Of a stretch of DNA of 64,000 nucleotides, positions 1-32,858 are shown piece by piece. Every line of letters begins with the position of its first letter. The stretch's first letter is position 1. The notes beneath the pieces were generated by a model. The model was not told the origin of the DNA. It made no database searches and saw only the letters and a program-made list of their open reading frames with translations. The translations under genes were made by a program, and so were the position numbers. This DNA is from Thalia democratica (taxonomy: Eukaryota): contig OZ241827.1 in the NCBI GenBank assembly GCA_965202585.1, positions 13,330,001-13,394,000 on the forward strand, given 5' to 3'.

Positions 1-1413
1 TAGTTATTACATTGTTGATGTAAAAGATAGTTCTCAAGTATAGTTTAAATGTTTTATCTTATCAAAAGGATGTAAAAAATCATTCAAGAGACATCAAAAG
101 AGTGTAAAAATAATGTAAATATTACGGGTTAGATATATACACCTTTTTAAGCAAACTACAGCAGTTAAAGTCACAAAAACAGGTCAAAATCTTAAAAAGG
201 TGTTTTTATAGCCTTAAAATAAGTTTAACAAAAATTTCTACAATTTTGATAAATTAAAATTAACATTATATGTTTCAATTAATTTTTTAATTCATAACTT
301 TCGTAGAACTTAAAATATATTAAGATAGAAGTTTTAGAATCTTTGTATTTTTTATAAAGACTTTTTGCGGTTATGTTAAAATTTATTTAAAATTCTATAA
401 TTACCATGGTGGTAAAATGATGTAATTTTTTAAGTATTTTAGTTGTGCTAAATTAAATATTTATAATAAACGTATATACAAAGTGCACTTTTGAAATATC
501 AATTTCAGATGTAAAGTAAAATTAACAAACAATCTTGATTTAATTTATCACAATAAAATAAAACAATCTATGTAAATGTCTGACTAATGACTTAAAAAAG
601 ACAAATTAAATTTTTTCATGTTATTTTTATCCAATTATACGCTTTAAGTATTGATTAAATTTTGTGGTTTATAATAAATCTCGGTCTTACAACAAAGTTT
701 TTGTCTTTCTATAATCATAATCCAGTAAAATTAACAGATGAAAGTTTTTTTTTAATTGACAATTTATCAAATTAAAAAAAAAATATTATGTTTTTTTTTA
801 AACTTGTGATAGATTTTTAACTAATTTATGTTAAAATTTTTAAGAACATTTTAATTGTGATTAAAAAACTTAAATACAGATGGTGACACTAATATTTAAT
901 TTTTTTAGTATTCATAAATGTTAGACATTACTATAAAATTAGTATGAAAAAACTTTTATGATTATTGACTATTAATTCAAACGTTGTTACAAAACACTAA
1001 GTAAAGACAAAGGTATAATAAAACAAACAAAAGTACAGAATAAAATATCAACTTTAGCTATAACCAAATAACTATGAACCAAAATTGTACGCTCTACATT
1101 GTATTTTAGTTTTTCAAATATAACTGCAACATTTTTTTGTTTGCCGACATTTTATTAAACACAATATTTACTCGTGATAGGTCAGCCACAATAAAAGTAA
1201 TAGGTGCTAACAACGAGTTGATTATTTTTAGAAAATTTAAACTGCAATGTTTCAACTGCAACCAACGCAACGCAACTTTTGGTTGTCAACTGTTAATTAT
1301 AACACTATTTCAAAACACATAGTAAACACAAAATGTTCTTGTAAGCGGTCAGCCACAATAGAATTAGTACGTGTTCCCAACTTAACCAACTTGCCAGTCA
1401 AACAAATACTTAC

Positions 1414-1544
1414 ATGAACACAGGAAGCTACTCATCGAACGAGTATATCTTGAGTTTGTTTACATATATGCCCAATTGACACATTTCCATTTAGTTGGTG
1501 CGCTCGTGTAAGTGTCAGGATAGTGCCGGGGTACGAGATTTATA
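1414..1544 (-). promoter_or_regulatory. Paralogous TATA promoter and non-coding first exon; predicted to serve a gene left of the window
   Basis: TATAAA at 1544-1539, putative start ~1513, donor CAT|GTAAGT at 1414/1413. Homologous to 37012-37153. Confidence 0.55.
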
Positions 1545-2890
1545 CGTAACCTGGTTTAGAACGTATCTTCACGTTTTTTCTTGTGGGCTTTATTAACTAA
1601 TAAATCGCAAACTCGTATTTTACCTTTAATTTTGTTTTGGTGTCAATACACACTCTATAATCTTTATATGATTGAAAACAATTTTTTTCAACTCGTTGCT
1701 TTATTTTTACGTAAAAATAATAATAAATTTGTTGAGATTACCTAGTGACTGTTTTGATAAATTTATGTATTAAGTTGCTTTATACGATAATAGAGTAAAA
1801 ACTTAACTAGTATTTGCTAACTGGGATACGTGATTCATTTATGAAACTTTTTCACGTTTTTTACCAAATTTGATAACGTAAACGTCTCGTAAACTTAAAG
1901 TTTGTTTTAGTATCAATATACACACTAAAACTCGAAAAATAACTTGATAAGGGCTTTAATGTTACAGCTGCGTTTTACATGCAATTTTGTTTAATATTTT
2001 CTAGTAGCTCTAAATCATAAGCTTAAATATTAAATATATAAAGAAAAGTTAACTAATATTTTCTAAAAAAACACAAAATAAACTAAGACTATAAACATAA
2101 TCAAACAAATTTTTGATATTAAATTTAACATGCTGCATTAAAACTGTTTATGTTTCAATATAAAATAGCTTCAAATTAATGTTTTAACTAATAAAATTGC
2201 TTTTAAGTAATATCACTCATGAATTCAGTAACTATTTTATCATTACTCACAAATCTCCTACTTAGAAAATAGTTAAGCCATTTCCTGTTTTTCTACTGAT
2301 TATTAAACATTGATAACCAAAAAACAGCTAATTAATCTTTTATTAAATTTAAAATGTCATTAACATTGTAAAACTCTAACAGATAGCGAAGCTAATTAAT
2401 ATCTTTTATACTCGATCTAAAAAAAAATGTATTTAGTAGTTATAAACTCGAAAATAAAAAATAAAAACTTTAGAAGCAACATCTCATTTACTTTAAAACA
2501 TCAAACAACTAATTAATACATAAAAAATAATTTTCTACTTAACAAAAAACTTATGTTCTATAACTTAAGAAACTGTTTTAACTAAAACATAGTGTTGTTT
2601 TAATCACTTTGTTTACAAAAACAAACTAACCAAAAGTGCAACGCTGTGCAAGACCCATCCAACTTGTTGTAAAAACAAAATAAATAAATAACAACTTTCA
2701 AGTTTGGAAATTACTACCAACCGAACTCGTTCCGGAGCTTTGTACTGCCTCTATTTACACCGTGAAAGATTATCAAAACAAAATAAATTTAGTAGGCGCT
2801 TTTGTATGTGGGATTACTAAAAGCTTTATGTAGAGTGTTTTTACACAACAACTGGTACTGGTAGCTTCTTGTGGTTCCACTGGTGAAAAC

Positions 2891-2902
2891 TGAACTTGAC
2901 CT
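2891..2902 (-). promoter_or_regulatory. DR0-type nuclear receptor response element (AGGTCA-AGTTCA); also 38230-38241
   Basis: TGAACTTGACCT is identical in copies 1 and 2 while the sequence to its right diverges. Confidence 0.45.
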
Positions 2903-5199
2903 ATGTGTAGGTCTGTTTTTACAGTTAATTTTACAATATTAATAACCAGAATAAGTTAAGTATTTTATTATTAATAGAACGTAACATAAATTTTTACAGT
3001 TGCTACAAACCTGAAAACTTAACTGAACCCTTTTTTAGTACTAGACTGATGTTTTCGAAAGCAAATACTATATTTTGCTTATAGAATTTTTGAACTTTTG
3101 CTTAAAGTTGTAGGTAAAATAAATTTATTTACTTTTCATATTTTAACTTTTAACAAATATTTTTATTTTATCTATGCATTAGATTTAAAAGAAAAAAAGT
3201 TAATGTGCAACCTAAAAAGTTTATGTATTCATTTTAAAAGATTTGTGCAAAAATAAAAGGACAGCAAATTTTATCCTGTGAAAAAATTATAATTCTGGGA
3301 ACAAACATCTGGTGCCAAACAATTTCTTACAAGTTATGTGTGTTTTATATTTAATCAATTTAATTCAGCCTTGTCAAAACGTTTCTCCATAAAGCTAAAC
3401 GTAAATGGTTTTAACTTTTTCAATTTTTAAAATCAGCTTAAAAATCAAAAGTGTTTTCTTTTTTAACTGAGGTTTATAGCAGTCTTATTGAAGTACAAAA
3501 ATATGTCAAATGCTAAAAAACTTCATTTTATTTTTTTATTCATGTGATGTAACTGTATTGGAAAAACGTGGTATTATTTGACAATCCTACAACTTGAGTT
3601 TTAAATAAAATGTGATAACTATTAAATATACTTATAAAAAACTTTGTTTATTGTTAGTAACCATTTAAATTTTTTAGAATTATATTAACCTAAGTTTTTA
3701 TATTTTATAATTTTTATAGAAATTTCTAAATTAAACTACAAAATTTTACTAACAGCTAAAAAAAATTAATACAATTTTTAAATAGTTTTTGGAATATTAA
3801 AACTGTTGTTTAAAAATCTGGTAAATAAAAAAAACTTCGAAATTGTAGCTTTTGTAGAACATTTACTTCTTGCAGTGAGTTTTAACTTTTTATGTTTGAA
3901 TAAAATGTTTGTTTAAACAGATAAAAACAATTTTTGTTTAACAGAAAACTAGTTGTTTAAGTTTAGCTTAATTTATTTAAAATAATTTTACGTACGAAAA
4001 GTTGTAAAGAAAATTTGATCTTCGATTTCGAAAGAAATAAAAACATTTGATGTGATTCGAAAATAGCACGACCGCTTTTATATAATACCAATGCTTAAAC
4101 GACACCAAAAACACATTAAAGTGTTTTCTAAATTAATTACAATGTCATCATAATTGTTACAAAACAAAACCATTAACCGAAAAGATTAGTTAATTTAATC
4201 GACTGCTTTTTTGTTCATGCTGGTCAAATGACAAATATTTTTACGGATTTCACGGAAAGTTAATCTCTAATTATATCTCAATTAATTAAATTATATAATC
4301 TATTTTTGGTCACAAAATATAAAACTTTTTAAATATTGCTTCAACTTTGTAACTACTGCAAAAAAAAGCACAAGCTATAAAGCGTTTTTTTTTTATTCTT
4401 AGCAAATTATTAAATCAGTTGACATTATACTATGTTATTTTTCAAGTTAAGACAAAACTAATTAAGCTGTGTTTTTATCACTTTCTAAATTGTTGTCATT
4501 ATTTAAAGCTGGGAAAAACACCCGACTAAATTTCTTAACTTTTTATTAACTATTTTGTTAACGTAAAGTACTTATAAAAAGTTTAAGTATCAAGTAAAGT
4601 TTACAAAACAATATAACACTCCTGAAAAAGTTGACATACATGAAATTTTGATATTTGTAGCAAAATCTAAACTAAATCAAAACCACCATAAAATAAGGGT
4701 TTGAAAATAAAACAATTACTGGCTTTTGTTTAAAATAACTGCTAACCCGCAAACAGCTGATTGTAAATTACAGTCATTAGCTTTAGACAAACGTCAATTG
4801 AAGATGGTAAACCCTTTATAATTGCTTTCTAATGAAACGTATTTAGTTAAAGAAGTTTTATGTAAACAAAATTAAGCTGTTTGGAATAGTTTTTAATATG
4901 TTCTTGTATGAAAACCAAAAGTTTCTTGTTATTTAAAACTAAAAGAAAAAGTTAAAAGATGTGCTTTAAATAATTTTTTTTTAAGTTAAGAAAGGTATAT
5001 AAAATGACCTTGAAGATCTAATAGAAAACAATAAAATTGGAATATGACTTATCATGCTCACTATGTATTTGAGTTTTAAACTAACAGTTATAGTTTACAA
5101 GCTTATTATAACTATTCAAACAGGAAAAAACTAAAGTTGAGGTAATTAGTATTTATCTTGTTCATTGGTTTTTCTGCAAATTTATTTATCTTGATACTT

Positions 5200-5600
5200 T
5201 TAATATCAAAAATTTTAGAAACAAGATTATAGCAATGTAAAATAAAATATAACTGACAAAAAAAGCAAACTTTTTGGTTGCTGTAAATTTTAAACAATAA
5301 AATTATGATAAAACGTTTATCTCGATATAATCACTAAACAATTGAAATATTATATAACATAATTATTATATTAGCTCAGTATAATCAAAATAATTAATAA
5401 AATAACTAAAGTTATAGCAACTCGTCTTGATTTAATTTGTTGTTTGTTCACAGATTTATTTAAACTTAATACATTTTATATCAAAAATGTTATTAAAAAA
5501 ATTGTAGCATTGTAAAATAAAATATAACTTATAATAACAGCAAACTTTTTGGTTACGGTAAATTTAATAAGAAAAAAATATGATAAAACTCTTATCTTTT
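5200..5600 (+). repeat. Local ~280-bp degenerate tandem duplication specific to copy 1
   Basis: ATATCAAAAA...GCA(A/T)TGTAAAATAAAATATAACT...GCAAACTTTTTGGTT...ATGATAAAAC occurs at ~5200-5330 and ~5477-5600. It is single in copies 2 and 3. Confidence 0.75.
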
Positions 5601-6293
5601 TTAATTTAAAAAAAAAGAAATAAATTTTAAACAAACATCATAAATTTAATGTAACTTATAACATTTATTATCTTGTAATTTAATGTACATTACAAGATAA
5701 TAAAATAATACTTTGATTAGTACTAGCTACAATAAAAATATAGTTTTATATCATAAACCATTTCAGTATAAAGAAAAATACTTTGATTAAGATTTTAATA
5801 AAATGTTTTGCATAAAATTGTAATTGGTAGAAAAATTAAAAGAAAAATTTGATTAATTAGGTAACTAAAACGGTTTTTTGTTTACAAAAATGAAACCTTT
5901 AAACAATATAAATATGTTTTAAATTTGTTCTGTTTACTGACACAATAAAACTTGAATAAAAATTCAACTAAAATGATCTAATAAAGGTTGTTGATTGCAC
6001 GCAATAATTGTTCACATAAGTTTTAAAAATTAGCAAAATATCAAAAATTTATAAGTATCATATTTATATAAAAGAAGCATAAGTATAACAGTATATATGT
6101 CTAAATTTGTTCACTACGAAAGTATAAATTAAATCAATAATAACTTAGGTAAATATTTCAATTAATAATAAATACAGTTTTTTAAACGACAATAATTAAG
6201 TGAAATATTTTATAGAACTCCATACGAAATAAAAATGCTGCAATTTTAAGCCTAAATGTGTTTTGTTACATTTAAGACCTGAAAACGGTACGT

Positions 6294-6301
6294 TGACGTA
6301 A
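6294..6301. promoter_or_regulatory. CRE/bZIP-like site TGACGTAA conserved in all three copies (40725-40732, 50578-50585)
   Basis: GTACGTTGACGTAACA is invariant in the three copies. Confidence 0.4.
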
Positions 6302-9300
6302 CAGTTAAAATGATTTAAAAGTAAGAAACGAAAATTAATTTAAAAAATACTCAACTAACGTATTTTAAACTTAATTTTTTACTTTTGTTATTTTACTTGT
6401 ACTACTTATTAAAAAAAATTCAAAGTATAAGATAACACGAAACGAACAGACTAAAACTTCAAATAAAGTCTAAAATTCAAAAAGTTTTCATTAAAATAAA
6501 TTTTTCCTAAGTAATCCAAAAACAAGACTACTTTGCTTATTGTTTACAGTAAACGTGCTAAATTTCTTAAATAAACATGTAACAATATTTAATGTTTGAG
6601 AAAAGATCGTTTACTTAAGTAAAAATAGGCAAAGCTGAGTAGAAATGGAATTAAATAGTTTAATCCAAGTCAGATTTAGCACAAGCACCTGCTTCAAGGA
6701 CAAGTTTTGTTGGAGAAACTAAAAACTTCTAAATTTCGTATCAAACTTGTAGAATATTTTGATGTGATTTTTTTCTTCTATGTCTAACTTTAAGCAAGCT
6801 AAAAGGTTTAATTTTATAACTTGAAACATTTAAGTTAGTTCCTAAAATTTTTAATCACGAAAACTGTTTGCTGTTGTAAAGTAGTTTGGAAAATTTTTCT
6901 TTTATTTTACTCAATTTACTTAAGCAACTAACTGTTAACGTAATACATTTGCCTTCAAATTTAGTATTAGATTTGCATTTTAATCTTAAATCACAATTAA
7001 AATATAAAAGCTAGTATGGCATTTTTTATCAAATTACTTTTTTACATTTAAAGAAATAGTAAAACTAAACTTTTCTATATGTTTTAAAACAAGTCAAAGT
7101 ATAACAAATTTATGTGACTATTATTTTTCTTTTGAATTAAAATATTAATAAACTGTAGAGTAGAACTTTTTATAAAGCAAACATTTGTATTTTGATTTTT
7201 AATTGAAATATGTCAATTTAAAAAAAATAAATTCAATCTATTAAGGACATTTGTTTTATTGTTCATATTTAGATTTATTGTTTGTTGCTGATATTTTGGC
7301 TTTGTAAAACCGAACCACGTTTTCGAAAAAATTAATGATGATAAAACAAAGTTTGAACTTTTCGTTTTAAGTAAGCTGTTTACTTTAAATAAATCAACCA
7401 TTCTATTATAGTAAATTTTTAATAATGTTTAGTTAAGTACTTTACACGAACTTATCAATGAATAAACGCATAGTTTTTTTTGTGTTCATTCTTACTTTGT
7501 ACAAATAGAACTTAATATAAGTTATATGGTATTAAAGCTTGTGGCTGTACTATAAAATGGTTGATAAAGTTTAGGTAGTTTTTCTCGCTATAACAGTACT
7601 TGTGTGCATACTTAACAACTAGAAACAGTATTTAAACATATACAATAGTTTTTAGAAAAAACTTATTAGACTAAGATTTTTTGATTGTGCTAGCCATAAA
7701 CTGGTATATAGTTAAAAATAAACTTCTTAAGGTTTCCAAAACAATTCGGTAAAAAGATAATGAAACTGTTAATCTTATTAACGTGATTTTTAAGGGTAAA
7801 AATATGAACAATAAGTGTTAGCTAATTGTACTATTTAATCTTTCTTAGCTAACACTGTTTTGAGATCTAGTTTTTGTTCTTGAAGTTTAGTATCAACTTT
7901 ATCAAATTTCAAAAGAAGTAAGAGTTGGTACAGTTTACCAATATACATAAACAGTACATAAAGTTTTTAATTTTTTTAAAGTTGTATTAGCCTAAATTAA
8001 TTTTTATAAAGACTGTTTGAGACTACACTTTTAAAATATTGATATTATTAAGGTTTAGAACTGCTGCTACTAACATTTAACTTTTCATTACCTTTATAAA
8101 ATTAATAATATAAAGGTTAATAATTTTTATTAAATTAAATTTGTGCGTAAAAAAAATTAAAATTAAAAATACTAGCTTTTGTAATACAATACAAAGGATA
8201 ATGATTTTCTGAAAAAACAACCCTACTATACGTACTATTTGTATAAATTTCAACTTGATATTGTATAAATAACACACAGAAACGCGTTAAATATTGATTT
8301 AGCAGTTTTAAACAAACGTCAAATTTAACGAAACTTACTTATTACTATAAACATTAGCTTTTTTACTAGAGGTTTGTAATTGACATAAACATGCTAAGAG
8401 TGTCAAGTTAAGCTGATTCTCGTATAATATACATGATAATTCGTGAAATAACGTCAAATATTTATTCTCAAAATTTAAATACTTTTTAAGGTAAGGCATT
8501 GTTGAAAGCTTGAGGTAAGAAATTAAATATATTTTTTGACAAATCGAACAAAGTATATTTCTTATTGTTCATTAATAAAGTCAATTAACTTAAGTTTATG
8601 AAATTAAAAATCAAGCTTGACAACAAATTAAATAAATTTATTGTAAGAAAATTTGAAATATTATTTTAAATATAGAGAAAATCATTTTAATGTTTTTACG
8701 AAATTTTAAACTTACTTCATTTATTAGTTTTTATCAAAACTTTTAACCATTGTTTTCTTTAACGACTAAAACCAGCATGTAAAATAAAAAAAAAATCTAA
8801 CTATTTTTGTATTCAGACAGTGAATAACTACAAAAACTTTTTAATAATTTACATTATATGGTGAAGTTGCTTATTTGTGTACAATTAAACCTACAAGTTT
8901 AAAAGATTACTATTAAGTATTTTTTATTCCTCTGCATCCTATATGACATCATCAAGATTCGCTAACTCTTAATTTTTTGGAATAACTAATGTAAACATTA
9001 AAAAATTTTAAATATTACTTGTAAAATAAATTTAAAAAATAACGAGTATACTTATTTTTCTAGATAACAATATTGATAACGTTTGCTTATCACTTAGTCT
9101 TAGATAAACAAATAAAGTAATTTTAAATAAATTCTTAAAAACACAAGTTAACTTGTTTTACAGTTTTATATAATTAAAACTTAAACCAGTTTTTAATTCA
9201 ATAAGCTGGTATCAATTTTTCTTAAAAAACTAGCTTATAAAATGTGTCTTAATATGTAATAAATTACTAAGTATAGTAAATGCTAAAGGAACATTAAAAC

Positions 9301-12300
9301 TTAAGTTTTTTAATCAACTAGCACATTAATTTTAAATGGATTTTATTATGTGTTGTACAATTTTATGATAAGTGAACTTACTATTTTAAGTTTCATTGAT
9401 AACCTAGTTTTTATAGCAAAATTATATACATAATTTTTTTTAATTAGCTTAACAATCTGTTTCAGAAATATCAAATACAATAAAATGTTTCATTTTTTTC
9501 ATATTATAAGAATAGACACAGAGAAATAAAAACTCAAAATAAATAGTATTTTTTTAATTCTAACCTGTTTATTTTTATTTTGTTATTTTTTTTATCATTA
9601 TAATTATTGAACTTTATTGTCAAACGAAGGACCTAGGCATTAAAACCTAAGCAACTTAAACTGTAAGACACTAGCATTAAAATAAAACATATTACAGTAT
9701 TGAAATAAACAAAAAACTTTTACAAAGTACAAACTGAAAAAACTCAAACTTTTATAACTAAAATATTTAAACAACTCGAAAGCTGTTAATTTTCAAATAT
9801 ATATTCCAAAACAATAGTCTTTAGCACCTCTTGTCAAAGTCTTTCAGATTCTGGCTCGAAATTCTAGGAACTATCCTGAAGATATAAGTCAACTATTCTT
9901 CATCAAACAAGAAATTTTAAAACGGCATTTATTTTTAACTTTAGATATAAATTTTCTTGATGTAGAATATTGATCTCAACAAATATTCGTTATTCATCAA
10001 TTTTTCAAAGTTTTACTACGGCATATTTAGTTAGAAATTACTTCAAATATGTGGTAGCAACAATTTATAAATCTAGCTTACCAATCAACTCAGCATCCAA
10101 TAATTTTAGAATCTAAAGTCTCAAGCACATTGACAATAGACCGGCAAAAAATCAAAATAAAATAGTATTTAAGATCTACTTTAACTATTATTTTCTGTTG
10201 TACCTTTTTGAAACCAAGAACAAAATAGTAATTTCGAGTAAAACTTTAAGCACTTTGTAATAAATAGATTATTCATCATTAGTTTTCTTCAAAATTTGAT
10301 AAATTAAATTACGGCCAAATAAAATGTTTTTTTGTCATTAAGGTCATTTAAACACGATTACATAATATAACTAACTCAATTTATTTCTGAGAACTTGTGA
10401 AACTTTCATTAAATAAAAACTGTACATATAGTGCAAAATAAATCACCTGCTATTAATAATTTTAAAAATAGTTCGATCAATTTGTGATTAATAATTTTTT
10501 TCACCATTAAGGTCATTGATTAAGAATAAGTTGTATAAATAACTCAACTAAAAAAAATACTTTTAAAACTTTTAAAAAGTGTGTTAATGTTAAAACTAAA
10601 ATGTGCGAAACCATATATGTTGTGATAAATATAAAGTTATGCTGGTACTGACACCCACAATGGTTCAGTTTAGACTTATTTCAAGGAAAACAAACAACAT
10701 ACAGACTATTCTTGCTAACATTTATTACTTTGCGGTTTTAAACAAAGATAAATTTAGGTCACCAAAAATAAAGTATTAACTTGCTAGTGATATTACCGCA
10801 CAATTTTAATATTATTGAAATAAAAATGTTATTACATATATTATTAGTTTTAACTTCAATTTTTGTTATTTTCATAAATTTTAAAAATATATTATGTAAA
10901 TTTAAAGAACTTAAAAAAGGTTTTGTATCTTAACAATTATAAAAAAATGCTTTAAATAACAAAATAATATTTCATACAAAAATATAAAGTTTGATTTAGT
11001 TATTAAAAAAAAATAATAAAATATTTTGTACAAAGCATTAGAAATACTATTGTCTATCTTTAAACTATTTTATTTATAAATGACTTAAACTTCTTAAATT
11101 TATTCTATTTGATTTCTTTATTTACTGTGTTTAATATAGTTATAATCCTTTTTTTACAAATTGAAAAAACTTAAAAAATGGTTTTGTGTCTTTAAATTAA
11201 TATAGAAAAGCGTTGTAGATAACTTTACAGTATTTTAAATATAAATACACGACTTGATTTGCCAATTATTTAGTAGTAAATAAAAAAAAATGTTTTAAGT
11301 TAAATATTAAAAGTATTTTTAAATATGTCTTAAAATGTCTTAAACTAAAATTTTTACTTATCATATTCAAATTAGTTTTGTTTAATACGATTACTTTTTT
11401 GTAAGTATAAATTTTCTCATTGCTAAACAAGCCTATATTAAATTTTAACTTAATTAAAGAAATTACAAAGTTTGATTAACAAAATCTACCTCAAGTTACT
11501 TTCGTTTGTTTCCTGTTTATATAACTACAATGCTACAAATTAACGACTGTTTTTTTTTTTTTGCTTTTTTGGTAAAAGTTTAACTTGCTTTATATTTTAA
11601 CTTATGGTTTATTCCAATTAATACCATTTACTGAATGTAGGCTCTAGAGAACAATTAAAATTGTATTGAAAACAACGCCATACCAAAATAAACTTTGAAT
11701 TGTTTTTTTTTGGTAAAATTATTTATACATGTGCTTATATTTTAAACTTGGTTTGAATCCTTTTATCTAATGTCAAATTAAAGCTTTGATTGTACTTCCT
11801 ATCAGCAAATTATGTATTTAAGCTTTCTAATCTTTTAAACTAACGTACCACACTGCAATTGGATAATATTATTTTACGGTGAGACTAATTTCTTTTTTTT
11901 TTTTCAAACTGTAATTCGGTGATACCGTTATTTATTTTATGTTATTATTTTTAAAATTTTAGACTAGTTGCTTTTTTTTCGCGAAGTAACTTATAAACTA
12001 TGCCGTGTTTTTCCATAAAACACTGGCAAACTCACATTTTTACGATAAACTAAAACAAAGTTCAAGGTATATGTTACAAATTTTAGCCTTATGCACTGAT
12101 TAAAAAAATAACATTGAACATAAACTATTACAAAAAATGCAATCTGTTTAAATTACCTCTAAAATGATAATAATTATAATTTGTTCTAATTATTAAAATA
12201 GATTTTACTTCTTACTTTCAGTTTTTATTACTTTCTTTTCACTTTTAGGCTAGTTAAATTTGTTTTCAATGTAAACTTTTTTTTAAGTTAGAATTATACA

Positions 12301-13855
12301 ATAATCATAAAGTACCAAGTATTAAGTCACAACAATTAAAATTATTTTATTATGATTAAAATCATACAAGTTTTCAAATATAAGATTGAAATATAAAACT
12401 GCTTAATAAGTTAAAAAATTTAAAGTATTTCGAAAGTTTACGTAATACTCTTGGCGATAGGCGGTACTTTAGTTATAAGGGAACTAAAAAGCCCTTAACT
12501 TAACATTTTTTAAATATAGTTTAGTTAGATTTAAACATCGCAATTGCAACCAATCGTTTTTAAACAAAACTTTAATAAAAAATAAGGATTATAACTTATT
12601 AATAAAATCACTATTTTGTTTTGATTTTTTAGATCGGAGAATCACTCCAATACTCCGACCGAGGCGACGCCTATAGACCAAACTACTAAAATTTATTAAA
12701 CTATTTTAGAAATTTTGGAAACTTTATTGTAAACATTACTGTCAAAGATATTGTTAAAACGTTTTTGAAAAAAAAACCTCAGTTTATTATTTGGTTTGGT
12801 TGGTAATAATTACAAAGAAAGAGATTTTGTCAATTATACTAAAGGTTTATACTTGAGTGTTCCGGAGGCTTTAATGAAATTTCGAAAAACGCAACAATTT
12901 ATAACTTTTATAGTTATTTTGTTCAAAATTTTAGTTTTGTTAAATTTGACATAATGATGTTATTATAGAGCTAAGTTGTGGAACACGAAAAAAGAAATTT
13001 TTTTTTTTTTCAAATAAGTCGACTAATTCAAATTTAACTTTACATAATTTCCGGAAACAAATGCGTTTTATGAAATTATCTACTTAATTTAGTAATCTTT
13101 TCTAAAGGGTATTTTCATGTGACTTCTTCAGAATTTTAACGCAAGTTTGAAGCTAAGTATTTTAAGTTGAAATTACTTATTTTATTTTTTAATATGCAAA
13201 CCGCATGATCTACTTACTAAAAAATCGGTTTAACGTTTCACTAAAACATTACTGAAGCTAAAACATTTACTAAAACTTTAAGCTATGATTAAATTATTCA
13301 CTTAAAAGATTATTCTAATCTTTAACATCCTAATTAAAATTTACATGGTTCTACTTACTTTTATGTTCTTAAAATATGAAATATAGTTTTTATATTAATT
13401 TTGTACTTCTTAAACATTTTTACTACGCTTGTTTGCTAAGTTAATAATAAAATAATTTGTTATAAATATTTGCCTTTTTACTAAATTAAAGGTATATTAG
13501 TTACATAATCTTTTACATACTATAAAGGAAAAAAAAGAAGTATTACACATTTCGTAATATTAATTTAAAAAAAAATTGTAATGCAAATATTGAAAAATGT
13601 TTTCACAAAAGTATTGTTTTTTCAGTGATCTAAAAACTTTTTTTGAAAAATAATATAAACTCTTATAATGGCAACTAATTATGACGTTATAAAAGTTTAT
13701 AAAAAAAAAACTACTTCAGCTTTATGAGAATACGTTTGTATTAATAAGAAAATTTTTTAATAAATTTTTTAATAAAATACAAAACGTTTAGACTTAATCA
13801 TTTAAGTAGAAGGAACAGATATGTTTGAGTTATATTATGTTGCTCTGATATCATA

Positions 13856-13863
13856 TGACGTCA
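13856..13863. promoter_or_regulatory. CRE palindrome TGACGTCA; also 47390-47397, one mismatch at 57388-57395
   Basis: Perfect CRE at the homologous position in copies 1 and 2. Another perfect CRE is at 27305-27312 in NR intron 2. Confidence 0.45.
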
Positions 13864-15369
13864 TCACGCGTCACTACTAAATAATGTATATTTATATTAT
13901 ATCTACTTTTAAACTTAAATATAACCTTTTTTAACAAAAACTATGGAAAATAAAAAGAGTACAACTTGTTAAAGAAGTTTAGGTTTATAAAAATATTCGA
14001 TTATTGAAATAAACTTATAATTTTCAAATATAAAAAGGTAATTAAATATATAGAAAAGCCATACAAAAGACAATACTATAACTTTTTCGCTTATAGAAAA
14101 TGTCGACATAATTCACTTGGGCCACAATTTTGCATATCAGTAAAAAAAGCTCAATCTTTCAAATAAAGTTTCCATATTTCCATTATTGGACCACCGGGTT
14201 GCAACTTCTCTGCAAACTGGATACTCGGGTTCCGTTCTTATTAAAACTAGCCGCATTTTTTAAGTAACCGAAGAAAGCTGCAGTCGTCAACATGCAATCA
14301 GTCATCATAAATATTCAAATGAAGTCGAAACCAGGGTTTCAGTTTACTGAGAGTCTACGGTCTAACTACTCGAAACATATGATCAAACTTGTCAATAAAA
14401 ATACTAATGCAAACTGATCAACAGTTAAAACTAAACTGTTTATTTTGTTAAGTATTTAGTAAAACGAGCATAAAACTATGAGTAATTATAGATGTTATAA
14501 CAAAATTTTCCAAAAGTTGTTAAAGTTTTTCCTGTGTGTAGTGAACTTTACTACCTTTATTTGAATTCTTATATTAGTTTTTGAAACCTAAAATACTTAA
14601 GTTGTGTAACATAGTCTTCATGTTTTACACAAAGCATAACAAGTATTTTGAAAACTCTATGTTTAATAAAATAAATGTCTTTAGATATTTTTTATTTTTA
14701 TTGTTCGAACTTTGTTTTAACTTATAAAACTCAAAGAAATAAACTCCAGTAATTAATATTACAATTTTATTCAGTCACAATAAGTTTTTGAAATTTTAAT
14801 TGGACATAATTTTTCAATATAGAACCAAGTTAATTAATTTTTGTATTTTTTAATGTTTTTAAAGTATAATTGTTTCATTTGTGACCAAATATAATATTTG
14901 AAAATAAATTCGACATACACCAAAATGAGGTAAGATATATATAAAATTGATGATCACTTAAATGTTCAACTTAAATAAGTTTGTGCACGCAAAGTATGCA
15001 CAAGATGCATTAAGACTAATCAACTGAAGTTATATATTATTCTAATAACTTTATTGTTTAAAGTAAACTCTAAAGTCATAAAAAAATAAAGATAAAAGTA
15101 GCTTTACATAAAACCCTAAGTTTAATTAAAAATATTAAATGACTTAACTAATAAAAGTTTATTAAAAAATTACACAGACTATCATTAAAAATGTGAGGTT
15201 ATAGCTTTTTACGTAATTAATTCGATTACATTCTAAAAAACTTAAGATATTTGTGAATGTGGTCGTAATTTAACAGGTATTGAGCTTATTGTCAGTTAAA
15301 ATTTCACATCAAAATATTTTTAAGGCGTCAATAAGTTGGTCAAAAATTTTAATAACTACAAAATAAAAC

Positions 15370-15381
15370 TGACCTTGAACT
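15370..15381 (-). promoter_or_regulatory. DR0 / TCAAGGTCA-type nuclear receptor element (AGTTCA-AGGTCA); also 59087-59098
   Basis: TGACCTTGAACT is identical in copies 1 and 3. Confidence 0.45.
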
Positions 15382-15823
15382 AGGGATAGTTTAGTAAACA
15401 TCAAGTTTCAAAAATAAGAATAATCAAGTTAGTACTAATTTATTTATTTAATTTAAACAAAAAGTGTGAGAAAGTTCTTGTTTAAAAGGTCAACTTTTAT
15501 ATTTATTAAGTTCAGCTAGAGTAATATTTAGTTACATTGTTTTATTTATTTTGTGTTTTATGCGTTTATAACATTTCTATAGTCTAATATTGATATTTAA
15601 CATTAGAGTCGAATTTAAATTTGATTGGATTTCCTTAAAACTTAGATTTAGTAAACAATATTACATAATGAAACACAATTTTATAATATACTTTTTAAAA
15701 TATAAACTTTTTTTTAAGAGTGTTTACCTTTTGTACAAGTAAACTTTCCAAAATGAATATTTTTTATAATTCAGATAAGTTTTATAACAAACTAAAGACT
15801 TTTTTTTATTTTTTTTTTATAGA

Positions 15824-15933
15824 TTATTGAACGACAAAAAACCTGAAATATTTGGTCTTAGGATCTTCTGCATAAAGAACCTCTCGGTTATCGAATTGAA
15901 CACCAAGGATACCTTCTAACGTCTTGTTTAGGA
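15824..15933 (-). CDS. Candidate short terminal exon of the NR gene (VLNKTLEGILGVQFDNREVLYAEDPKTKYFRFFVVQ*)
   Basis: The only non-repeat, non-MITE GC-enriched island I found downstream of exon 3. CAG acceptor at 15936-15934. Open only in phase 1, the phase exon 3 needs. Stop at 15826-15824, AATAAA at 15810-15805 (inside a T/A run, so weak). A plus-strand reading of similar length is also possible. Confidence 0.3.
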
Positions 15934-16156
15934 CTGTTTGGTTGGTTAAAACGCAATTAAATACAGACCAGTTTTGCAAAATACTGTTCCATAAAACTCA
16001 AAAGATTATTTTTGTTTAAAGACTTATTCACTTTACTATGAACTATAAACCTATCAAAAAAACCATAAAAAATGTCGAGTAAAGCAACCTTTTCAGCTAC
16101 TTTTGTGTAATTTTAAGTATAACATTGTTAACAAGGATGCATAATATGTTTTAAAC

Positions 16157-16331
16157 CAGTGCTTCTGAAACTTTTTCTAGTGGCGGAACCCTTTTTCAAA
16201 GTTTAACTTTTCCGCGGAACCCCTAATTTTAATTTTACGTAAAACGTTTAATTAAATAAATGTTCTTTTTTAAATTTCGAAAAGCTTCGCGAAACCCTAA
16301 GGTTCCGCGGAACCCCATTTCAGAAGCACTG
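16157..16331. mobile_element. 175-bp hAT-type MITE
   Basis: Perfect 14-bp TIR CAGTGCTTCTGAAA...TTTCAGAAGCACTG. Perfect 8-bp TSD TTTTAAAC (16149-16156 and 16332-16339). Internal GCGGAACCC repeats and the palindrome GGTTCCGCGGAACC. Confidence 0.95.
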
Positions 16332-19300
16332 TTTTAAACAATATTTAAAAGTAATACTTTCGAAGATTTTAAGTCTTTAATTTGATTATTAGATATAAGT
16401 TTAACTAGTTTATACTTTGTAAATTATTTTCAGTGCTTTTTTGATAAATAACTTTCTTCATACTAACATCTTTAAAATTCTATAACATATTTTTCGTTTT
16501 AAAATAAGTATTTGTTTTATAGTTCAAACCAAAATTTCAAATAAATCTATAAGCTTTATTTAACAGATGAGGGAATATCAGCTTAAATGTAGCATATTTA
16601 ATTAATAATTTTAGACTTTTAGACTAAATTTAAATGATTTTACTGTTTGAAATTCGCACATTCTTAAATTACGGAAAAAAAACCAACTTTTGTTTAAATA
16701 AGAGATATAACGTTTTTATCACATATACCTTTCAAAAACAGTTTAGGAACTTTAAGTTTAAAGTAAAAACTATTTTCAGTATAAGATTTAGCCATAAAAG
16801 CAAACAATAAAGTTTTTTTTTTCCTGTAATTTAAATAAGCTTAAATTTAGACTTTAACAGTAAAAACTTTTATTACTTTGAATATTTAGCAATAAGCTAA
16901 AGATTTAGTAAAAAAACTAGCAACCATTTCTGTAAATGAAATTAAATTAGTTGTATTTTAATATTTAAGAAAAACGTCAGTTTTTTCATATCTACAAAAT
17001 AAATCATATGAAGTTTTATAATATCAAGACTTATTAACAATATAAACTTTTTAAATGTCAAGCTATATAGAAAATTAATATGAAAATTTTATTTCATCAG
17101 TTACATATATAAAAATTAAGTTTTAATTAAAATCATATTAATAGTTTTGGTAGTTCTTAGAATAGAAGAGAAAGAAAGCATATCTAATTGTTTTTTAATA
17201 AACTAACTTGTATAAGAAATTATGTAAAAATTTATTAAACTTTTAAAGAAGATTTTTTTTTGTTTTACTAAAATCTCTAACTCACGAAGCTTTTTTCAAG
17301 CTTAGAGCATGTTTTTTCAAAAGTTTGTATTGAACTAAAAAATACTGAATTTAAACACAAATAATTTCTATTCATACTGATATAGGTATCATCGCACACT
17401 TGTAATCTCAAAAAAAAAAGTTAAAACGTTCTATTTCTAAACTGAAATTATTTTACATTACAAAAATTAAATATAAATTAGCTTATAATCGTAATTTAAT
17501 GATGATGTAAGATATGCCTTAATACTGATAACAAGACATTATCTTGGAAACTTGTTAATTAGAAACTAATTCTGATTTACTTTTATAAAAACGAGATAAT
17601 TTAATTTCAAATTTAAGCGTTTAACCCTTTACAATGAAAACATTTTTTTTTGTATCTTGATTAAAATAATTTCATGAGTTTTATGTCAACTTAATAAAAG
17701 ATAGGTATTTTTACTATAATTATCACACGATACAGTGACTTTAATATAGCTACAAGACTTATGTGTATAACCAGTTTACAACTTATCTCTAAACTATCAT
17801 GAAATAATTTTAAACTTTAATTTAAATATTAAAATAACAAGTTTTACTACATAAAACACAAGTTGTTCACAATTAAAATTTTATAGATAATTTTTTTAAC
17901 TGTTTTTTGGCAATTTAGTAACTCTGGTTTTTATTAATTGTTTAATTTTACATAATTTTTGCTATAATGGACTAGAATAAATTACTAAATTTTTAGAGAT
18001 TTGAGATATTTTAAAATTCTATTATCAAGAAGAAAAGTCATTTAAAAAACGACACATGTAGAAAATACAAATACCATTTCTAAAATAATAAACTAAACAT
18101 GGATGCATTATGTTTTATATGAAACTAATATTTTACAGGCGCTTGGTATTGAAAACAAAGTATAATCTAAAGTCTAAACCATTTTAAAAACTATAGTTGA
18201 TTATCCATAAAAATTATTGTAGTATAAATGTTTCCGTTTATTTTTTCATTGTAAAGTTTAGTACATAACGCAATAAATTTATAGCTCTGTTTATTTATAA
18301 GGTAACGACAAACAACTATTTGTGGCTGCTACAATTGAAAGTGAAGTTTACTAAGTTATTTACCTGAATCTTTTATTCAATTGTACTTGAATTTTGTACA
18401 TAATAATCAAAGTCCTGTAAAACATCTGATTAAGTAAAACTAGTTTAATTGATATTTTTTATTTGTTTTTAAGTTTACATATTTTTTGTTAAAAATGTGT
18501 ACTAGTTGAAATAAAAATAGTTGCTTTAAACTAGTTTAAATAAACTTTTGTTTTTGCAGATTAATCATAGACTTTTGATAAATTACTTTTTTAATATTAT
18601 ATTCACTAAAAAAAGAATTCTAAAAAATTCATTATAACAACAGGTTTACATTGTTTTAATATGTTTTTAAAAGACATGAACGTATTACTTTTAGTATTTA
18701 AATCAAATTAAAGTCTAATTAGCAGTTATTAAAATGTAACTAGTCAACAATAAAACCACGATAAATCGATATTTAATGGTTTTGGTACAGCTTATTTAGA
18801 AAATATTTAACAAAACTTTTAACAAAATATACTGTCTTTTAAACGTATTCTTATGTTTTAAAACAAATATTATAGTTTAAATTTATAAACTAGCTGTAGA
18901 AGAAGTTAGGTCATAAAATTATGTTTGTTGTAATGTAATGGTTTAACTTAATTTCAAAATTTTAATAAGAAGACTTAGAAATCAAAATTTTTCTGTTCAC
19001 ACTGTTTTAACACAAATAAAGATTGTGTAATACTTTATTATAGATAGAAGTGTTGAGAGCATTAATTACTCTTAAAGTATTCAAATTCTTAACTGTAGAC
19101 TAACGTTCAAAATCCAAAACCAAACAAAATTAAATAAAAATAGTTGTTATAGTAAAAGCTTCTACAACTATTTAATGTAGTTAAAACTGTTTATGATTTT
19201 TAAAACTTAATAATTTAAACATGTTTTTAGTGAACATTAGTTTTTAATTAGGTAATACATAGTTATTTTAAAATACTTTCAAAAATATGGTAATTTTAAG

Positions 19301-25300: not shown

Positions 25301-26557
25301 CAAGGTTCAAGAATATCAAGTCCAAAGTTTAACAATCAAAATCTAATGTACGTGTCTTAAAAGTTTTGTTTCAAAATGAATTTTGCTTAGAACAGCTGCT
25401 TATATACGATCAAAGGTTATAAATTTTGTCCTGCTAAAATTTTTGGTGTTATAAATACTTTATGCTGTCAATCATATTGGTTTTAGTTTTTAGCTTTTGT
25501 TGAACGTGCTTTGCTTTAAGTTTCATATTAATGAAAAATAAAAGTTATAAATTACTTTAGCATATGGTGCATTAATTTAAAAATTAGACTGTTCATAATA
25601 CATGTATTAAATATTAAACGGCTACGTATTATTTTATATAAGTATGATTGTTTTTTGTAAGTATCATACAAAATTATTACAGATTAATAGCCTAACAACG
25701 CTTACTTTTACTTTATTTTTTAGTTAGTCCACAATAGCCTTGAAGGTTTTAGATATATATAAAGAAAACCAAAGTCTTTCTTTCTTAAACATATGTTTTA
25801 TTTTTTATTGCATTCAAAATTTTATTATAAATTGTCACTAATACCTTTGTAGTAAAACAATAAGTTTATGTAACAAACATACTTTTTGTAATATATAATG
25901 ATTGTTTTATGTTTACAACTAAATCTTTTTTTTAAAGTTCACTTAAGTTTGGAACGAATTGTTTATGTTAAGTTCTAAAATTAAAAAATTAAAAATTGAA
26001 ATAGTAAAAACTTGCTTTTTTGGTTTGTAAAAACTCTACTAAACGAACTTAAAAAAATTTACTTTTTTTTTTTCAAACCGCTGTACCACTTTGTTCTTAA
26101 TAAAACAATCAAACCACATCAGATAAATAACAAAGCATACTAAATAATTATCTCAAAAAAATATCTTTATTATTTTTCAAAACAATTATAATTGCTGTAA
26201 AAACATATAACTTATTGATGTTTGTTTAACACTTTGCCATAAAATAAATTCTAAAAAAAACAACTTGTATTTAAGATATATATAATATAGTATTCTTTGT
26301 CTAAATACCTTTAGTGCAATGTTTGTTTTGCGCTCAGTTCTTATATCTAACATAAATATTATTTTGAAAAATTTATATCACATATATTAATTTCTTTGAA
26401 AACAAGTTTTTATAATGATGTTTAGTTATCAAAATTGTAATTAATTATGACAAAGAAATTGAAATTTATAAAAGGTTTATTTAAAAACTAAACGGTCCCT
26501 GATATGTGATAAACAAGTTTAAGAAAATATAGCAGAATAGTTAATAGAATTTCAAAC

Positions 26558-26785
26558 AACAAACCTGATTAAATAATTCTCACCCTGGTAAACTTATGAT
26601 ACATGATTACATATACGCATATATATATAAGTGAATATTCTGGATAAATACAAACAAACATAATTTAAACATTCCCACCCTTATACACTTTGATAAACTT
26701 ATAAAATTGTATATTGTTTGTATATTATATATCTATAAACAAACCTGATTTAACCATTCCGACCCTGATACACTTCTGATACCTG
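26558..26785 (-). repeat. Degenerate tandem copies of the exon 3 3' end and donor
   Basis: 26558-26605 matches 26738-26785 at 39/48 ungapped. 26653-26690 matches 26738-26775 at 33/38. Confidence 0.88.
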
Positions 26786-26874
26786 CAATGAGCGCAATGT
26801 GTTCTCGTCTTCTTACTTATCAGGCAATTCTCCTTCGCGCTACACCTGTACTTGGCTTTCTTCTGTACACTTCT
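26745..26874 (-). CDS. NR coding exon 3: second zinc finger (130 nt); not in the supplied ORF track
   Basis: TTACAG acceptor. Translation [43 protein letters not shown]+G with four zinc-ligand cysteines. GTTTGT donor at 26744 (phase 1). Confidence 0.95.
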
Positions 26875-32800: not shown

Positions 32801-32858
32801 AAATTGTCGCCCCCTGGTGGTAGCACCTGTCGTCGTTTGTAAACTCGCTCTTCAGCAT
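26745..32858 (-). CDS. NR4A: Divergent NR4A-type nuclear receptor, spliced model join(32858-31989, 30323-30069, 26874-26745); 418 codons + 1 nt, 3' end unresolved
   Basis: Three GC-rich exons join in frame via GT-AG introns (phases 0, 0, then a phase-1 donor). DBD reads [26 protein letters not shown]|[43 protein letters not shown]. The QHYGV, CEGCKG P-box, VQKxAKYxC and GMVK motifs match the NR4A pattern ([27 protein letters not shown]...GMVKE). The introns after FFK and after GMVKx give the 43-codon+1 (130-nt) second-finger exon I recall from vertebrate NR4A genes. Symbol is family-level only. Confidence 0.85.
29674..30098 (-). repeat. Degenerate tandem copies of the exon 2 3' end (P-box region) and donor
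   Basis: 29674-29714 matches 30058-30098 at 34/41 ungapped. 29911-29936 matches 30061-30086 at 21/26. Confidence 0.88.
30069..30323 (-). CDS. NR coding exon 2: end of A/B domain and first zinc finger with P-box (85 codons)
   Basis: TTTTCAG acceptor (AG at 30325-30324). Open frame [11 protein letters not shown]...[33 protein letters not shown] donor at 30068. Confidence 0.95.
31989..32858 (-). CDS. NR coding exon 1: N-terminal A/B domain (290 aa)
   Basis: Long GC-rich ORF 32858-31968 in AT-rich flanks. ATG in an AAATAAAATG context. GTGAGT donor at 31988-31983 after ...NFIRS (phase 0), matching the phase of the next exon. Confidence 0.9.

What the first reader, a model, noticed from the sequence alone, without database searches (positions are those of the whole stretch)
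1..15620. Copy 1 looks like the whole upstream region of a second nuclear-receptor paralog just left of the window
Homology to copy 2 runs to the first bases of the window (17~35284, offset ~35.27 kb). It includes the TATA/first-exon/donor block, which points leftwards out of the window. Applying the same offset to the ATG at 32858 predicts a paralogous ATG exon about 2.4 kb left of position 1. The locus would then be a tandem NR4A-like cluster with duplicated ~15-kb regulatory regions. NR4A is usually single-copy in invertebrates (Hr38, nhr-6).
Basis: partly seen in the sequence, partly recalled or inferred. Interest (0 to 1): 0.75.

Follow-up and report, generated by a model that had tools for sequence, protein, structure and literature searches.

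The report
Tandem array of truncated nuclear receptors
The first 15 kb of the window is the upstream DNA of a neighbouring copy of the window's hormone-receptor-like gene, as predicted, and the two genes are part of a tandem array of nine such copies, all lacking the hormone-binding half, in a tunicate genome.

Summary
Copy 1 (window 1-15463) is collinear with copy 2 (35463-48191): 10.2 kb aligned at 77% identity. The homology continues past the left edge of the window.

A paralogous ATG exon lies 2.15 kb left of position 1 (2.4 kb was predicted). It is followed by its own two zinc-finger exons and a 23-nt last exon.

The locus is larger than two genes. Nine units of 35-54 kb lie at contig C2 13.25-13.56 Mb plus contig C486. 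Eight are intact and one is frameshifted. dN/dS is 0.06-0.4, and a marine metatranscriptome contig joins exons 1, 2 and 3.

Copy-1 DNA occurs only inside this cluster. It diverges at about the neutral rate, except for three conserved blocks; window 328-760 is 91.5% identical across units, as conserved as the coding exon.

The genes are not NR4A orthologues. They belong to a tunicate-wide family without a ligand-binding domain (Ciona, Phallusia, Styela, Clavelina, Oikopleura). NR4A is the nearest canonical DNA-binding domain. A canonical NR4A candidate lies on contig C10.

An earlier follow-up of this scan (s1-291880) had already described the window's gene as DNA-binding-only. The array, its history and the conserved upstream block are new here. 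Interest is moderate.

The parts
1..15463 (-). Copy 1. It is the distal 15.5 kb of the 27-kb intergenic region upstream of paralog g3, whose ATG is at window -2148 (outside the window, C2:13327852).
   Evidence: It is collinear with the upstream region of every unit in the 264-kb contig, including inverted copies. It is 77% identical to copy 2. It is found only in this cluster. It has no ORF of 90 aa or more and no Rfam match.
328..760 (-). Conserved non-coding block A, 2.5-2.9 kb upstream of the g3 ATG. It carries TATA-like motifs and a CCACCATG|GTAATT donor-like motif on the minus strand. It is a candidate core promoter or 5' non-coding exon, or an enhancer.
   Evidence: Mean pairwise identity across six units is 91.5% with 2% gaps. 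The flanks are 77-79% identical with 14-38% gaps, and coding exon 1 is 92.4%. Transcription was not tested.
15464..24826 (-). Region downstream of the window gene g4: about 330 nt of conserved 3' UTR, then 3' intergenic DNA. It is partly shared between units (16626-21433, 23333-24826) and has two unit-specific stretches (15464-16625, 21434-23332).
24827..24849 (-). g4 last exon, 23 nt. With the G that ends exon 3 it encodes AVRTKGK followed by a stop.
   Evidence: The acceptor TTTTAACAG is conserved. The peptide is identical in six copies, with only synonymous differences. Transcript-derived relatives end AVRVKSQ*, AVRVKSR* and AVRAKR*.
26746..26874 (-). g4 exon 3, the second zinc finger.
   Evidence: PF00105, 49 bits. 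The best PDB hits are NR4A2 and NR4A1. The donor TCAG|GTTTGT is conserved in five of six copies (GTTTAT in g6), and sequence diverges right after it.
30069..30323 (-). g4 exon 2: linker plus the first zinc finger, with P-box EGCKG.
   Evidence: PF00105, 41 bits. The exon boundaries are supported by a spliced RNA contig laid on paralog g3.
31989..32858 (-). g4 exon 1: the ATG and the 290-aa N-terminal domain, including a PLDLS motif and the QDVNL family motif.
32859..35462 (-). Proximal upstream region of g4. It corresponds to window -2147..229 of g3 and holds conserved blocks C (33132-33277) and B (34147-34347) and an acceptor-like ACACAG about 50 nt before the ATG.
35463..48191 (-). Copy 2, the upstream region of g4. 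The block A counterpart is at 35560-36013. The B sub-repeat starts at 38809.
48541..59161 (-). Copy 3, a younger tandem duplicate of the B part of copy 2 (89% identity, JC 0.116).

Best explanation
Window 1-15463 is the distal part of the intergenic DNA upstream of the next member (g3) of a tandem array. The array was made by repeated segmental duplication of a whole 35-54-kb unit: a gene of 8-13 kb plus 27-41 kb of intergenic DNA. It holds nine units. Six are head-to-tail on the minus strand of C2 (ATGs at 13252832, 13289265, 13327852, 13362858, 13416797, 13460227). Two are inverted (exon 1 starting at 13508335 and 13556939). One is on the unplaced contig C486. Each unit carries its own four exons and encodes a protein of about 425 aa: a 290-aa N-terminal domain, a nuclear-receptor DNA-binding domain, and a tail of 16 residues after the core DBD motif (its last seven, AVRTKGK, come from the tiny last exon). 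There is no ligand-binding domain. All of this is shown. Eight copies are intact and under purifying selection, and the family is transcribed and spliced as modelled; this is also shown. The genes belong to a tunicate-wide LBD-less 'NR-like' family whose DBD is nearest to NR4A, and the expansion is specific to this lineage (shown at the level of the sequences available). What follows is inferred. The proteins act as ligand-independent, DNA-binding-only transcription factors on AGGTCA-type half-sites. They probably act as repressors or competitors, because all nine copies and two metagenome-derived relatives keep a PLDLS CtBP-type motif. Most of copy 1 is neutrally drifting duplicated DNA. The three conserved blocks (328-760 in the window, plus two more just left of it) are the parts likely to act as promoter, 5' exon or enhancers.
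For: Exon 1 has nine copies in the genome, and exons 2 and 3 are found next to each of them. Collinear homology covers nearly the whole unit. The last exon encodes an identical peptide in six copies with only synonymous changes. For exon 1, dN/dS is 0.13-0.40 and dS is 0.07-0.31. For the DBD part, dN/dS is 0.06-0.19. One copy, g5, has a frameshift with two TGA codons. A 547-nt contig from a marine metatranscriptome joins exon 3, exon 2 and exon 1 at the predicted junctions, at 94-96% identity. There is no PF00104 match on C2 nearer than 38.9 Mb. The nearest proteins among 1.84 billion are LBD-less tunicate proteins at 64-71% identity, followed by true NR4A at 57-64%. In the DBD tree the NR-like family and NR4A form separate clades (100/98), and the copies of this genome are monophyletic (93/96). 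The trees of exon 1 with flanks and of the exon-1 codons group the copies as (g1,g5), (g2,g4), (g3,g6), (g8,(g7,g9)), and place all nine in one group apart from a Tara metagenome homologue on a midpoint-rooted tree, where that homologue is a flagged long branch and the grouping has no support value. PLDLS is present in all nine copies and in P0001 and P0002.
Against: The RNA contig is only 94-96% identical to g3, so it proves expression of the family, not of g3 or g4. There is no RNA evidence for the 5' end, so the role of block A is untested. DNA binding, the repressor role and CtBP binding are untested, and the PLDLS motif is absent from ascidian relatives. The protein lacks the A-box that NR4A uses for monomer binding, so its target site is uncertain. 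Copy number in other tunicates was not measured.
Confidence: 0.85

Rival explanations
1. Copy 1, 2 and 3 are copies of a large transposable element or dispersed or satellite repeat that merely sits near the gene. Homology would then say nothing about a neighbouring paralog.
For: The genome is repeat-rich, according to papers on salp genomes. Copies 2 and 3 are tandem.
Against: All three probes from copy 1 hit only the cluster, C486 and C1597, apart from four matches of about 100-150 bp. Homology is collinear with the gene exons in every unit. There are no long ORFs.
Confidence: 0.02
2. The array is an assembly artefact: uncollapsed haplotypes or mis-joined duplicates of one or two real genes.
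For: One unit sits on an unplaced contig (C486). Salp assemblies are reported to retain haplotigs.
Against: The units differ by 8-28% in sequence and by many indels, far more than alleles would. They have distinct unit-specific stretches. Contigs from DNA-like runs of organism A match the g3 stretch with zero differences.
Confidence: 0.04
3. The units are variable 5' cassettes, protocadherin-style, that splice to a shared downstream constant region carrying a ligand-binding domain.
For: Styela and Clavelina relatives have isoforms with different N-terminal regions joined to the same DBD.
Against: Every unit has its own DBD exons and its own terminal exon with a conserved stop and 3' UTR block. 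There is no PF00104 signal within 25 Mb on C2. Transcript contigs of relatives end right after the DBD.
Confidence: 0.03
4. Most copies are decaying duplicates with no function. Only one gene matters, and the conserved blocks reflect gene conversion rather than selection.
For: One copy (g5) is broken. The exon-only tree is star-like with short branches while the flanks resolve well, which is compatible with conversion in the exons. The g4-g8 pair has dN/dS 0.89 at dS 0.07.
Against: Eight of nine copies keep open frames in all exons, with dS up to 0.3 and dN/dS 0.06-0.4. The synonymous-only variation in the last exon is hard to obtain by conversion alone.
Confidence: 0.1

Closest known systems
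Tunicate LBD-less 'NR-like' nuclear receptors: Phallusia mammillata A0A6F9DMT5, Ciona intestinalis XP_026691557, C. savignyi H2YUF8, Styela clava LOC120341980, Clavelina lepadiformis LOC143468248, Oikopleura dioica CBY22780
   Same: They share the DBD signature [24 protein letters not shown] ... KKTRTHC ... CRYQKC and the YGGFG motif before the DBD. Several ascidian members share the N-terminal motif of the (R/K)(R/K)W..QDV(N/S)LA type (the copies here read [12 protein letters not shown]). They have only PF00105 and no PF00104, and the DBD sits near the C-terminus.
   Different: In this genome the tail after the DBD is cut to 16 residues, against 29-110 in ascidians and Oikopleura. Three transcript contigs of unnamed organisms also have the short tail. 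The PLDLS motif is specific to this genome's lineage. There are nine tandem copies here; the ascidian hits looked like one locus per species, but that was not counted.
NR4A (NGFI-B/Nurr1/NOR1, Hr38, NHR-6)
   Same: It is the nearest canonical DBD: second finger 64% identical, PDB top four hits all NR4A, 46.5-43.8 bits against RAR at 40. It has P-box EGCKG and a VVRT-like T-box start.
   Different: There is no LBD and no A-box (GRRGRLPSK). It forms a separate clade from NR4A. A separate NR4A candidate with LBD pieces is on C10:21266806-21269291.
Drosophila Knirps/Knrl/Eagle (NR0A), LBD-less nuclear receptors that recruit CtBP (from general knowledge)
   Same: The architecture is a DBD without an LBD, plus a PxDLS-type CtBP motif, which suggests a ligand-independent repressor.
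   Different: In the copies here the DBD is near the C-terminus. No sequence relationship beyond the superfamily was tested. CtBP binding is untested.
Lineage-specific tandem expansions of nuclear receptors, for example the HNF4-derived receptors of nematodes cited in PMC7827873
   Same: A single receptor type is multiplied by local duplication within one lineage.
   Different: The scale is much smaller (nine copies). The units are very large (35-54 kb) and the whole intergenic landscape is duplicated with the gene.

Membership tests
Nuclear receptor superfamily | C4-type double zinc-finger DBD (PF00105) with eight cysteines spaced C-x2-C-x13-C-x2-C and C-x5-C-x9-C-x2-C | tested here: met
   PF00105 scores 40.8 bits on exon 2 and 49.2 bits on exon 3 against a cut-off of 21.1. 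The regex for the full spacing matched in g1-g6.
Nuclear receptor superfamily | Ligand-binding domain (PF00104) | tested here: not met
   The protein ends 16 residues after the core DBD motif. The genome-wide PF00104 search gives no match on C2 nearer than 38.9 Mb. Relatives have only PF00105.
NR4A subfamily | DBD most similar to NR4A among canonical receptors | tested here: met
   The top four PDB hits of exon 3 are NR4A2 and NR4A1. After the tunicate family, the next hits in 1.84 billion proteins are NR4A proteins. The first finger does not discriminate.
NR4A subfamily | C-terminal extension with T-box and A-box (VVRTDSLKGRRGRLPSK type), needed for monomer binding to the NBRE | tested here: not met
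   Only AVRTKGK follows GMVKS, then a stop. The NR4A representatives keep the xGRRGRLxSK-type extension (SGRRGRLPSK/SGRRGRLSSK in P0068/P0090/P0075).
NR4A subfamily | Groups inside the NR4A clade (orthology) | tested here: not met
   In the DBD tree NR4A (5 sequences) and the NR-like family (15) form separate clades, 100/98. The alignment is short (84 columns) and there is no other outgroup. A separate NR4A candidate lies on C10.
Tunicate LBD-less 'NR-like' family | Shared DBD signature, YGGFG pre-DBD motif, N-terminal QDV(N/S)L motif, DBD near the C-terminus, no LBD | tested here: met
   The short-tail subclade has 99/99 support.
Tandem segmental-duplication gene array | Repeated units that are collinear across gene and intergenic DNA, adjacent on one chromosome, with each gene complete | tested here: met
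NR0A (Knirps-type) | Specific relationship to the arthropod Knirps DBD and kni-box | not tested
   Only the architecture and a PLDLS motif resemble it. No Knirps sequence was compared.

The most novel reading that the evidence does not exclude
The array could be a lineage-specific battery of Knirps-like, CtBP-recruiting DNA-binding-only repressors. Each would sit behind its own diverged 27-41-kb regulatory landscape but share one strongly conserved promoter block, and each would be deployed in different stages or tissues of the complex thaliacean life cycle. That would be a new case of a nuclear receptor turned into a multi-copy ligand-independent patterning system in a chordate.
Probability: 0.1. 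Interest if true: 0.7.

Novelty: new member of a known kind. Interest (0 to 1): 0.4.

Why it matters
Tunicates are usually described as having a reduced nuclear-receptor set: 17 genes in Ciona (PMC7827873). Here one unusual receptor type, lacking the ligand-binding half, has been multiplied to nine copies, eight of them kept under purifying selection. That points to a lineage-specific use of ligand-independent receptor-derived transcription factors in a pelagic chordate. The array is also useful material for other questions. It is a dated series of duplicated 35-54-kb units. In it, neutral decay of intergenic DNA stands out against three conserved non-coding blocks that are candidate promoters or enhancers. 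GC-rich exons (GC3 0.70) also sit in 22% GC surroundings.

Tried and rejected
- **More flanking sequence.** Full gene models therefore exist for six of the nine units. The other three rest on exon-by-exon matches.
- **Exon 1 protein search.** It found only two short metagenome ORFs and no annotated protein of this species.
- **Pfam on exon 1 and on a 57-aa open segment at 24682-24852.** Nothing was found. That segment proved to hold the 23-nt last exon and 3' UTR rather than a domain.
- **Rfam on 1-16000.** No match.
- **Literature.** Four full-text searches found no description of this family's lack of an LBD or of a salp receptor array. The two salp and tunicate genome papers do not mention nuclear receptors.
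- **RNA reads.** Only one RNA run held any of the stretch, and only as contigs. It gave no coverage upstream of the g3 ATG beyond one trace bin, so the putative first exon could not be tested.
- **Rejected explanations.** Dispersed repeat, assembly artefact and shared distant LBD (see rival explanations).
Full report
**1. Observation**

The window is 23% GC and has no gaps. Self-BLAST shows that 230-15445 is collinear with 35463-48191 at 72-84% identity. From 4060 onward it is also collinear with 48541-59161. Copies 2 and 3 are themselves a younger tandem duplication of about 9.4 kb at 89-92% identity. Summed, copy 1 against copy 2 gives 10.2 kb aligned at 77.1% identity, covering 64% of copy 1, with a Jukes-Cantor distance of 0.27. 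Copy 2B against copy 3 gives 89.2% and 0.116.

**2. Where the window lies and what is to its left**

The window is G000:C2:13330001-13394000 in an 802-Mb assembly. I fetched 100 kb on each side. I joined the pieces into a 264-kb contig.

A genome-wide search with the 290-aa ATG exon (window 31989-32858, minus strand) found nine copies:
- C2 minus strand: 13251963, 13288399, 13326986, 13361989 (the window's own copy), 13415934 and 13459361.
- C2 plus strand: 13508335 and 13556939.
- Contig C486: 38626, plus strand.

The copy at 13326986-13327852 corresponds to window -3014..-2148.

tblastn on the 264-kb contig shows that each of the six units there has exon 1, zinc-finger exon 2 and zinc-finger exon 3 in order. 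For the left neighbour g3 these lie at -2148..-3014, -4984..-5238 and -8822..-8950. Genome searches with exons 2 and 3 find them next to the other three copies as well, plus one solo exon-3-like match at C2:13639577.

Homology between the g3 and g4 units runs without a break across the window edge.

**3. Gene model**

Exon boundaries:
- Exon 1 ends at a GTGAGT donor.
- Exon 2 (30323-30069) runs from a TTTTCAG acceptor to AAG|GTAGGG. It carries the first finger, with P-box EGCKG.
- Exon 3 (26874-26746) carries the second finger and ends TCAG|GTTTGT in phase 1.

Pfam zf-C4 matches both finger exons. In all six copies the sequence diverges immediately after the exon-3 donor, so a further exon is required.

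I aligned the only block downstream of exon 3 that is shared by all six units. This revealed a conserved acceptor (TTTTAACAG) followed by 23 nt. Together with the G carried over from exon 3, these read AVRTKGK-stop in every copy. All differences between copies are synonymous. In the window this exon is 24849-24827. About 330 nt of conserved 3' UTR follows.

The protein is about 425 aa: N-terminal domain, DBD, and a tail of 16 residues after the core DBD motif, the last seven of them from the tiny last exon. This agrees with the earlier follow-up note s1-291880, which I used as a lead and re-derived independently.

**4. No ligand-binding domain**

No GC-rich or conserved open segment resembling an LBD lies in the unit. 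A genome-wide PF00104 search finds LBD exons on C4, C5, C6, C8, C477 and at C2 38.9 Mb, but none near 13.2-13.7 Mb.

**5. Are the copies alive?**

Eight of the nine exon-1 copies are open. The exception is g5 (13415934), which has a frameshifted stretch with two TGA codons. It has also lost the AG of the acceptor-like site before the ATG.

Selection measures:

| Region | dN/dS | dS |
|---|---|---|
| Exon 1, intact copies | 0.13-0.40 (one young pair, g4-g8: 0.89 at dS 0.07) | 0.07-0.31 |
| Exons 2-4 (DBD part) | 0.06-0.19 | 0.11-0.29 |

The DBD itself is nearly invariant.

One RNA run, a marine metatranscriptome, holds a 547-nt contig. Its pieces lie on exon 2 and exon 1 of g3. Its overhang is the reverse complement of the start of exon 3. 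It is therefore a spliced exon 1-2-3 transcript, at 94-96% identity. This shows that the family is transcribed and spliced as modelled. It does not show which copy is expressed.

**6. History of the array**

A maximum-likelihood tree of exon 1 plus 1.5 kb on each side resolves the copies as (g1,g5), (g2,g4), (g3,g6) and (g8,(g7,g9)), all at 100% support. In the exon-1 codon tree all nine copies fall in one group apart from a Tara Oceans metagenome homologue (P0002, 59% aa identity), but that tree is midpoint-rooted, the homologue is a flagged long branch, and the grouping carries no support value.

The chromosomal order is g1 g2 g3 g4 g5 g6, so the pairing suggests that a three-gene block was duplicated and then rearranged. 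The expansion may post-date the split from that relative, but the tree does not prove it.

Gene spans are 7.9-12.7 kb and intergenic spans are 27-41 kb.

**7. What copy 1 is**

Copy 1 is collinear with the upstream region of every unit, including the inverted ones. It occurs nowhere else in the genome apart from four matches of about 100-150 bp. It has no long ORF and no Rfam match.

Its divergence from copy 2 (JC 0.27) is at or above the synonymous divergence of g3 and g4 (0.11-0.23). Most of it therefore behaves as neutrally drifting duplicated DNA.

A six-unit alignment of the 6.5 kb upstream of the ATG shows three exceptions:

| Block | g3 (window coordinates) | g4 (window coordinates) | Mean pairwise identity | Gaps |
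|---|---|---|---|---|
| A | 328-760 | 35560-36013 | 91.5% | 2% |
| B | -605..-806 | 34147-34347 | 88% | 0% |
| C | -1671..-1816 | 33132-33277 | 86% | 1% |

For comparison, the flanks of block A are 77-79% identical with 14-38% gaps, and coding exon 1 is 92.4% identical.

On the gene strand, block A contains TATA-like motifs followed by CCACCATG|GTAATT. It is clearly constrained or homogenised, but I have no RNA evidence that it is an exon.

**8. Family assignment**

The second finger best matches NR4A2 and NR4A1 among solved structures (46.5-43.8 bits, against RAR at 40 and RXR at 37.6). The first finger does not discriminate.

I searched 1.84 billion representative proteins with exon 3. The top of the list is taken by multi-stretch proteins at 40-51% identity. 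Among proteins that match in a single stretch, the closest (64-71% identity) are these:
- Phallusia mammillata 'NR-like nuclear receptor'.
- Ciona intestinalis 'nuclear receptor isoform X1/X2'.
- Ciona savignyi H2YUF8.
- Styela clava LOC120341980.
- Clavelina lepadiformis LOC143468248.
- An Oikopleura dioica protein.
- Three transcript contigs of unnamed organisms, which end AVRVKSQ, AVRVKSR and AVRAKR, just like the copies here.

All of these have PF00105 only.

The next best hits are true NR4A proteins of nematodes, a hemichordate and a fish, at 57-64% identity.

In a DBD tree the LBD-less family and NR4A are separate clades (100/98). The short-tail forms are a subclade (99/99), and this genome's copies are monophyletic (93/96). 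The alignment has only 84 columns and no third subfamily, so the sister relationship to NR4A is not proven.

Exon 1 shares an N-terminal motif with several ascidian members: [12 protein letters not shown] here, against the (R/K)(R/K)W..QDV(N/S)LA type in ascidians. A PLDLS motif is present in all nine copies and in both metagenome-derived relatives of exon 1, but not in the other relatives.

A canonical NR4A candidate lies on C10:21266806-21269291. Its DBD sits in a 609-aa open frame, followed by three collinear weak matches to a hemichordate NR4A LBD.

All nearest relatives are tunicates. This fits earlier notes calling the genome a salp. The assembly size is close to the 790.7 Mb reported for Thalia democratica. 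I did not verify the species.

**9. Mechanism**

Shown:
- A DBD-only receptor-type protein.
- Multiple conserved copies.
- Transcription of the family.

Inferred from general knowledge of nuclear receptors:
- The EGCKG P-box implies binding to AGGTCA-type half-sites.
- Without an LBD the proteins must act independently of ligand.
- Without the NR4A A-box, high-affinity monomer binding to the extended NBRE is doubtful.
- The PLDLS motif suggests CtBP-dependent repression, as in Drosophila Knirps.

I put the repressor or competitor reading at about 35-40%. The structural reading (tandem array of whole units, with copy 1 as the upstream DNA of g3) I put at about 85-90%.

**10. Verdict**

Lineage-specific tandem expansions of receptors and LBD-less receptors are both known kinds. 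The tunicate family is present in databases, though I found no paper describing it. The window's gene had already been characterised in this scan. New here are the nine-unit array, its duplication history, the selection evidence and the conserved upstream block. Interest is moderate.

Noticed in passing
L023:5800-6200 (window -4200..-3800, intron 1 of g3): A very high-copy repeat. Contig word depth is 3.6-6.9 x 10^5, against about 10^2 in the flanks, in three DNA-like runs. A 946-nt contig of organism B skips 5927-6198, so the insertion is absent there.
   Followed up: partly
window 26650-26700 and the same place in five other units: About 80-100 nt downstream of exon 3, every unit carries an 'echo' of the last 35 nt or so of exon 3, including the donor (…AGAAGTGTATAAGGGTGGGAATGATTAAATCAGGT). 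Its meaning is unknown.
   Followed up: partly
window 24827-32858: There is a sharp composition contrast. Exons are 44-59% GC (GC3 of exon 1 is 0.70), while introns and intergenic DNA are 21-23% GC. This may reflect GC-biased gene conversion between paralogs or the high GC3 reported for thaliaceans (PMC13746493).
   Followed up: no
G000:C2:13404100-13416797 (unit g5, window 74100-86797): This is the pseudogene copy. Exon 1 has a frameshifted stretch with two TGA codons. The acceptor-like AG before the ATG is lost. The gene span is the longest (12.7 kb). The DBD exons are still intact.
   Followed up: partly
G000:C10:21266806-21269291: Candidate canonical NR4A gene. Both zinc fingers are contiguous in a 609-aa open frame, with no intron between the fingers. 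Three collinear weak matches to a hemichordate NR4A LBD follow.
   Followed up: partly
G000:C2:13639577-13639705 (+): A solo exon-3-like match (93% aa identity) about 75 kb beyond the last full unit. No exon 1 or exon 2 was found beside it. It may be a fragment of a tenth unit.
   Followed up: no
window 38809-48191 and 48670-58155: The roughly 9.4-kb B sub-repeat of the intergenic region is tandemly doubled in this unit (89% identity). By genome matches it is also doubled in the units of g7, g8 and C486, but it is single in g1, g2, g3 and g5.
   Followed up: partly
window 60198-63544, 21434-23332, 15464-16625: These stretches have no homologue anywhere in the 264-kb region. They are unit-specific insertions, or deletions elsewhere. 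Their content was not examined.
   Followed up: no
P0032/P0033 (Styela clava) and P0047/P0048 (Clavelina lepadiformis): In two ascidians the single LBD-less receptor locus gives isoforms with entirely different N-terminal domains joined to the same DBD exons. Only one isoform of each pair carries the QDV(N/S)L motif shared with the copies here.
   Followed up: no
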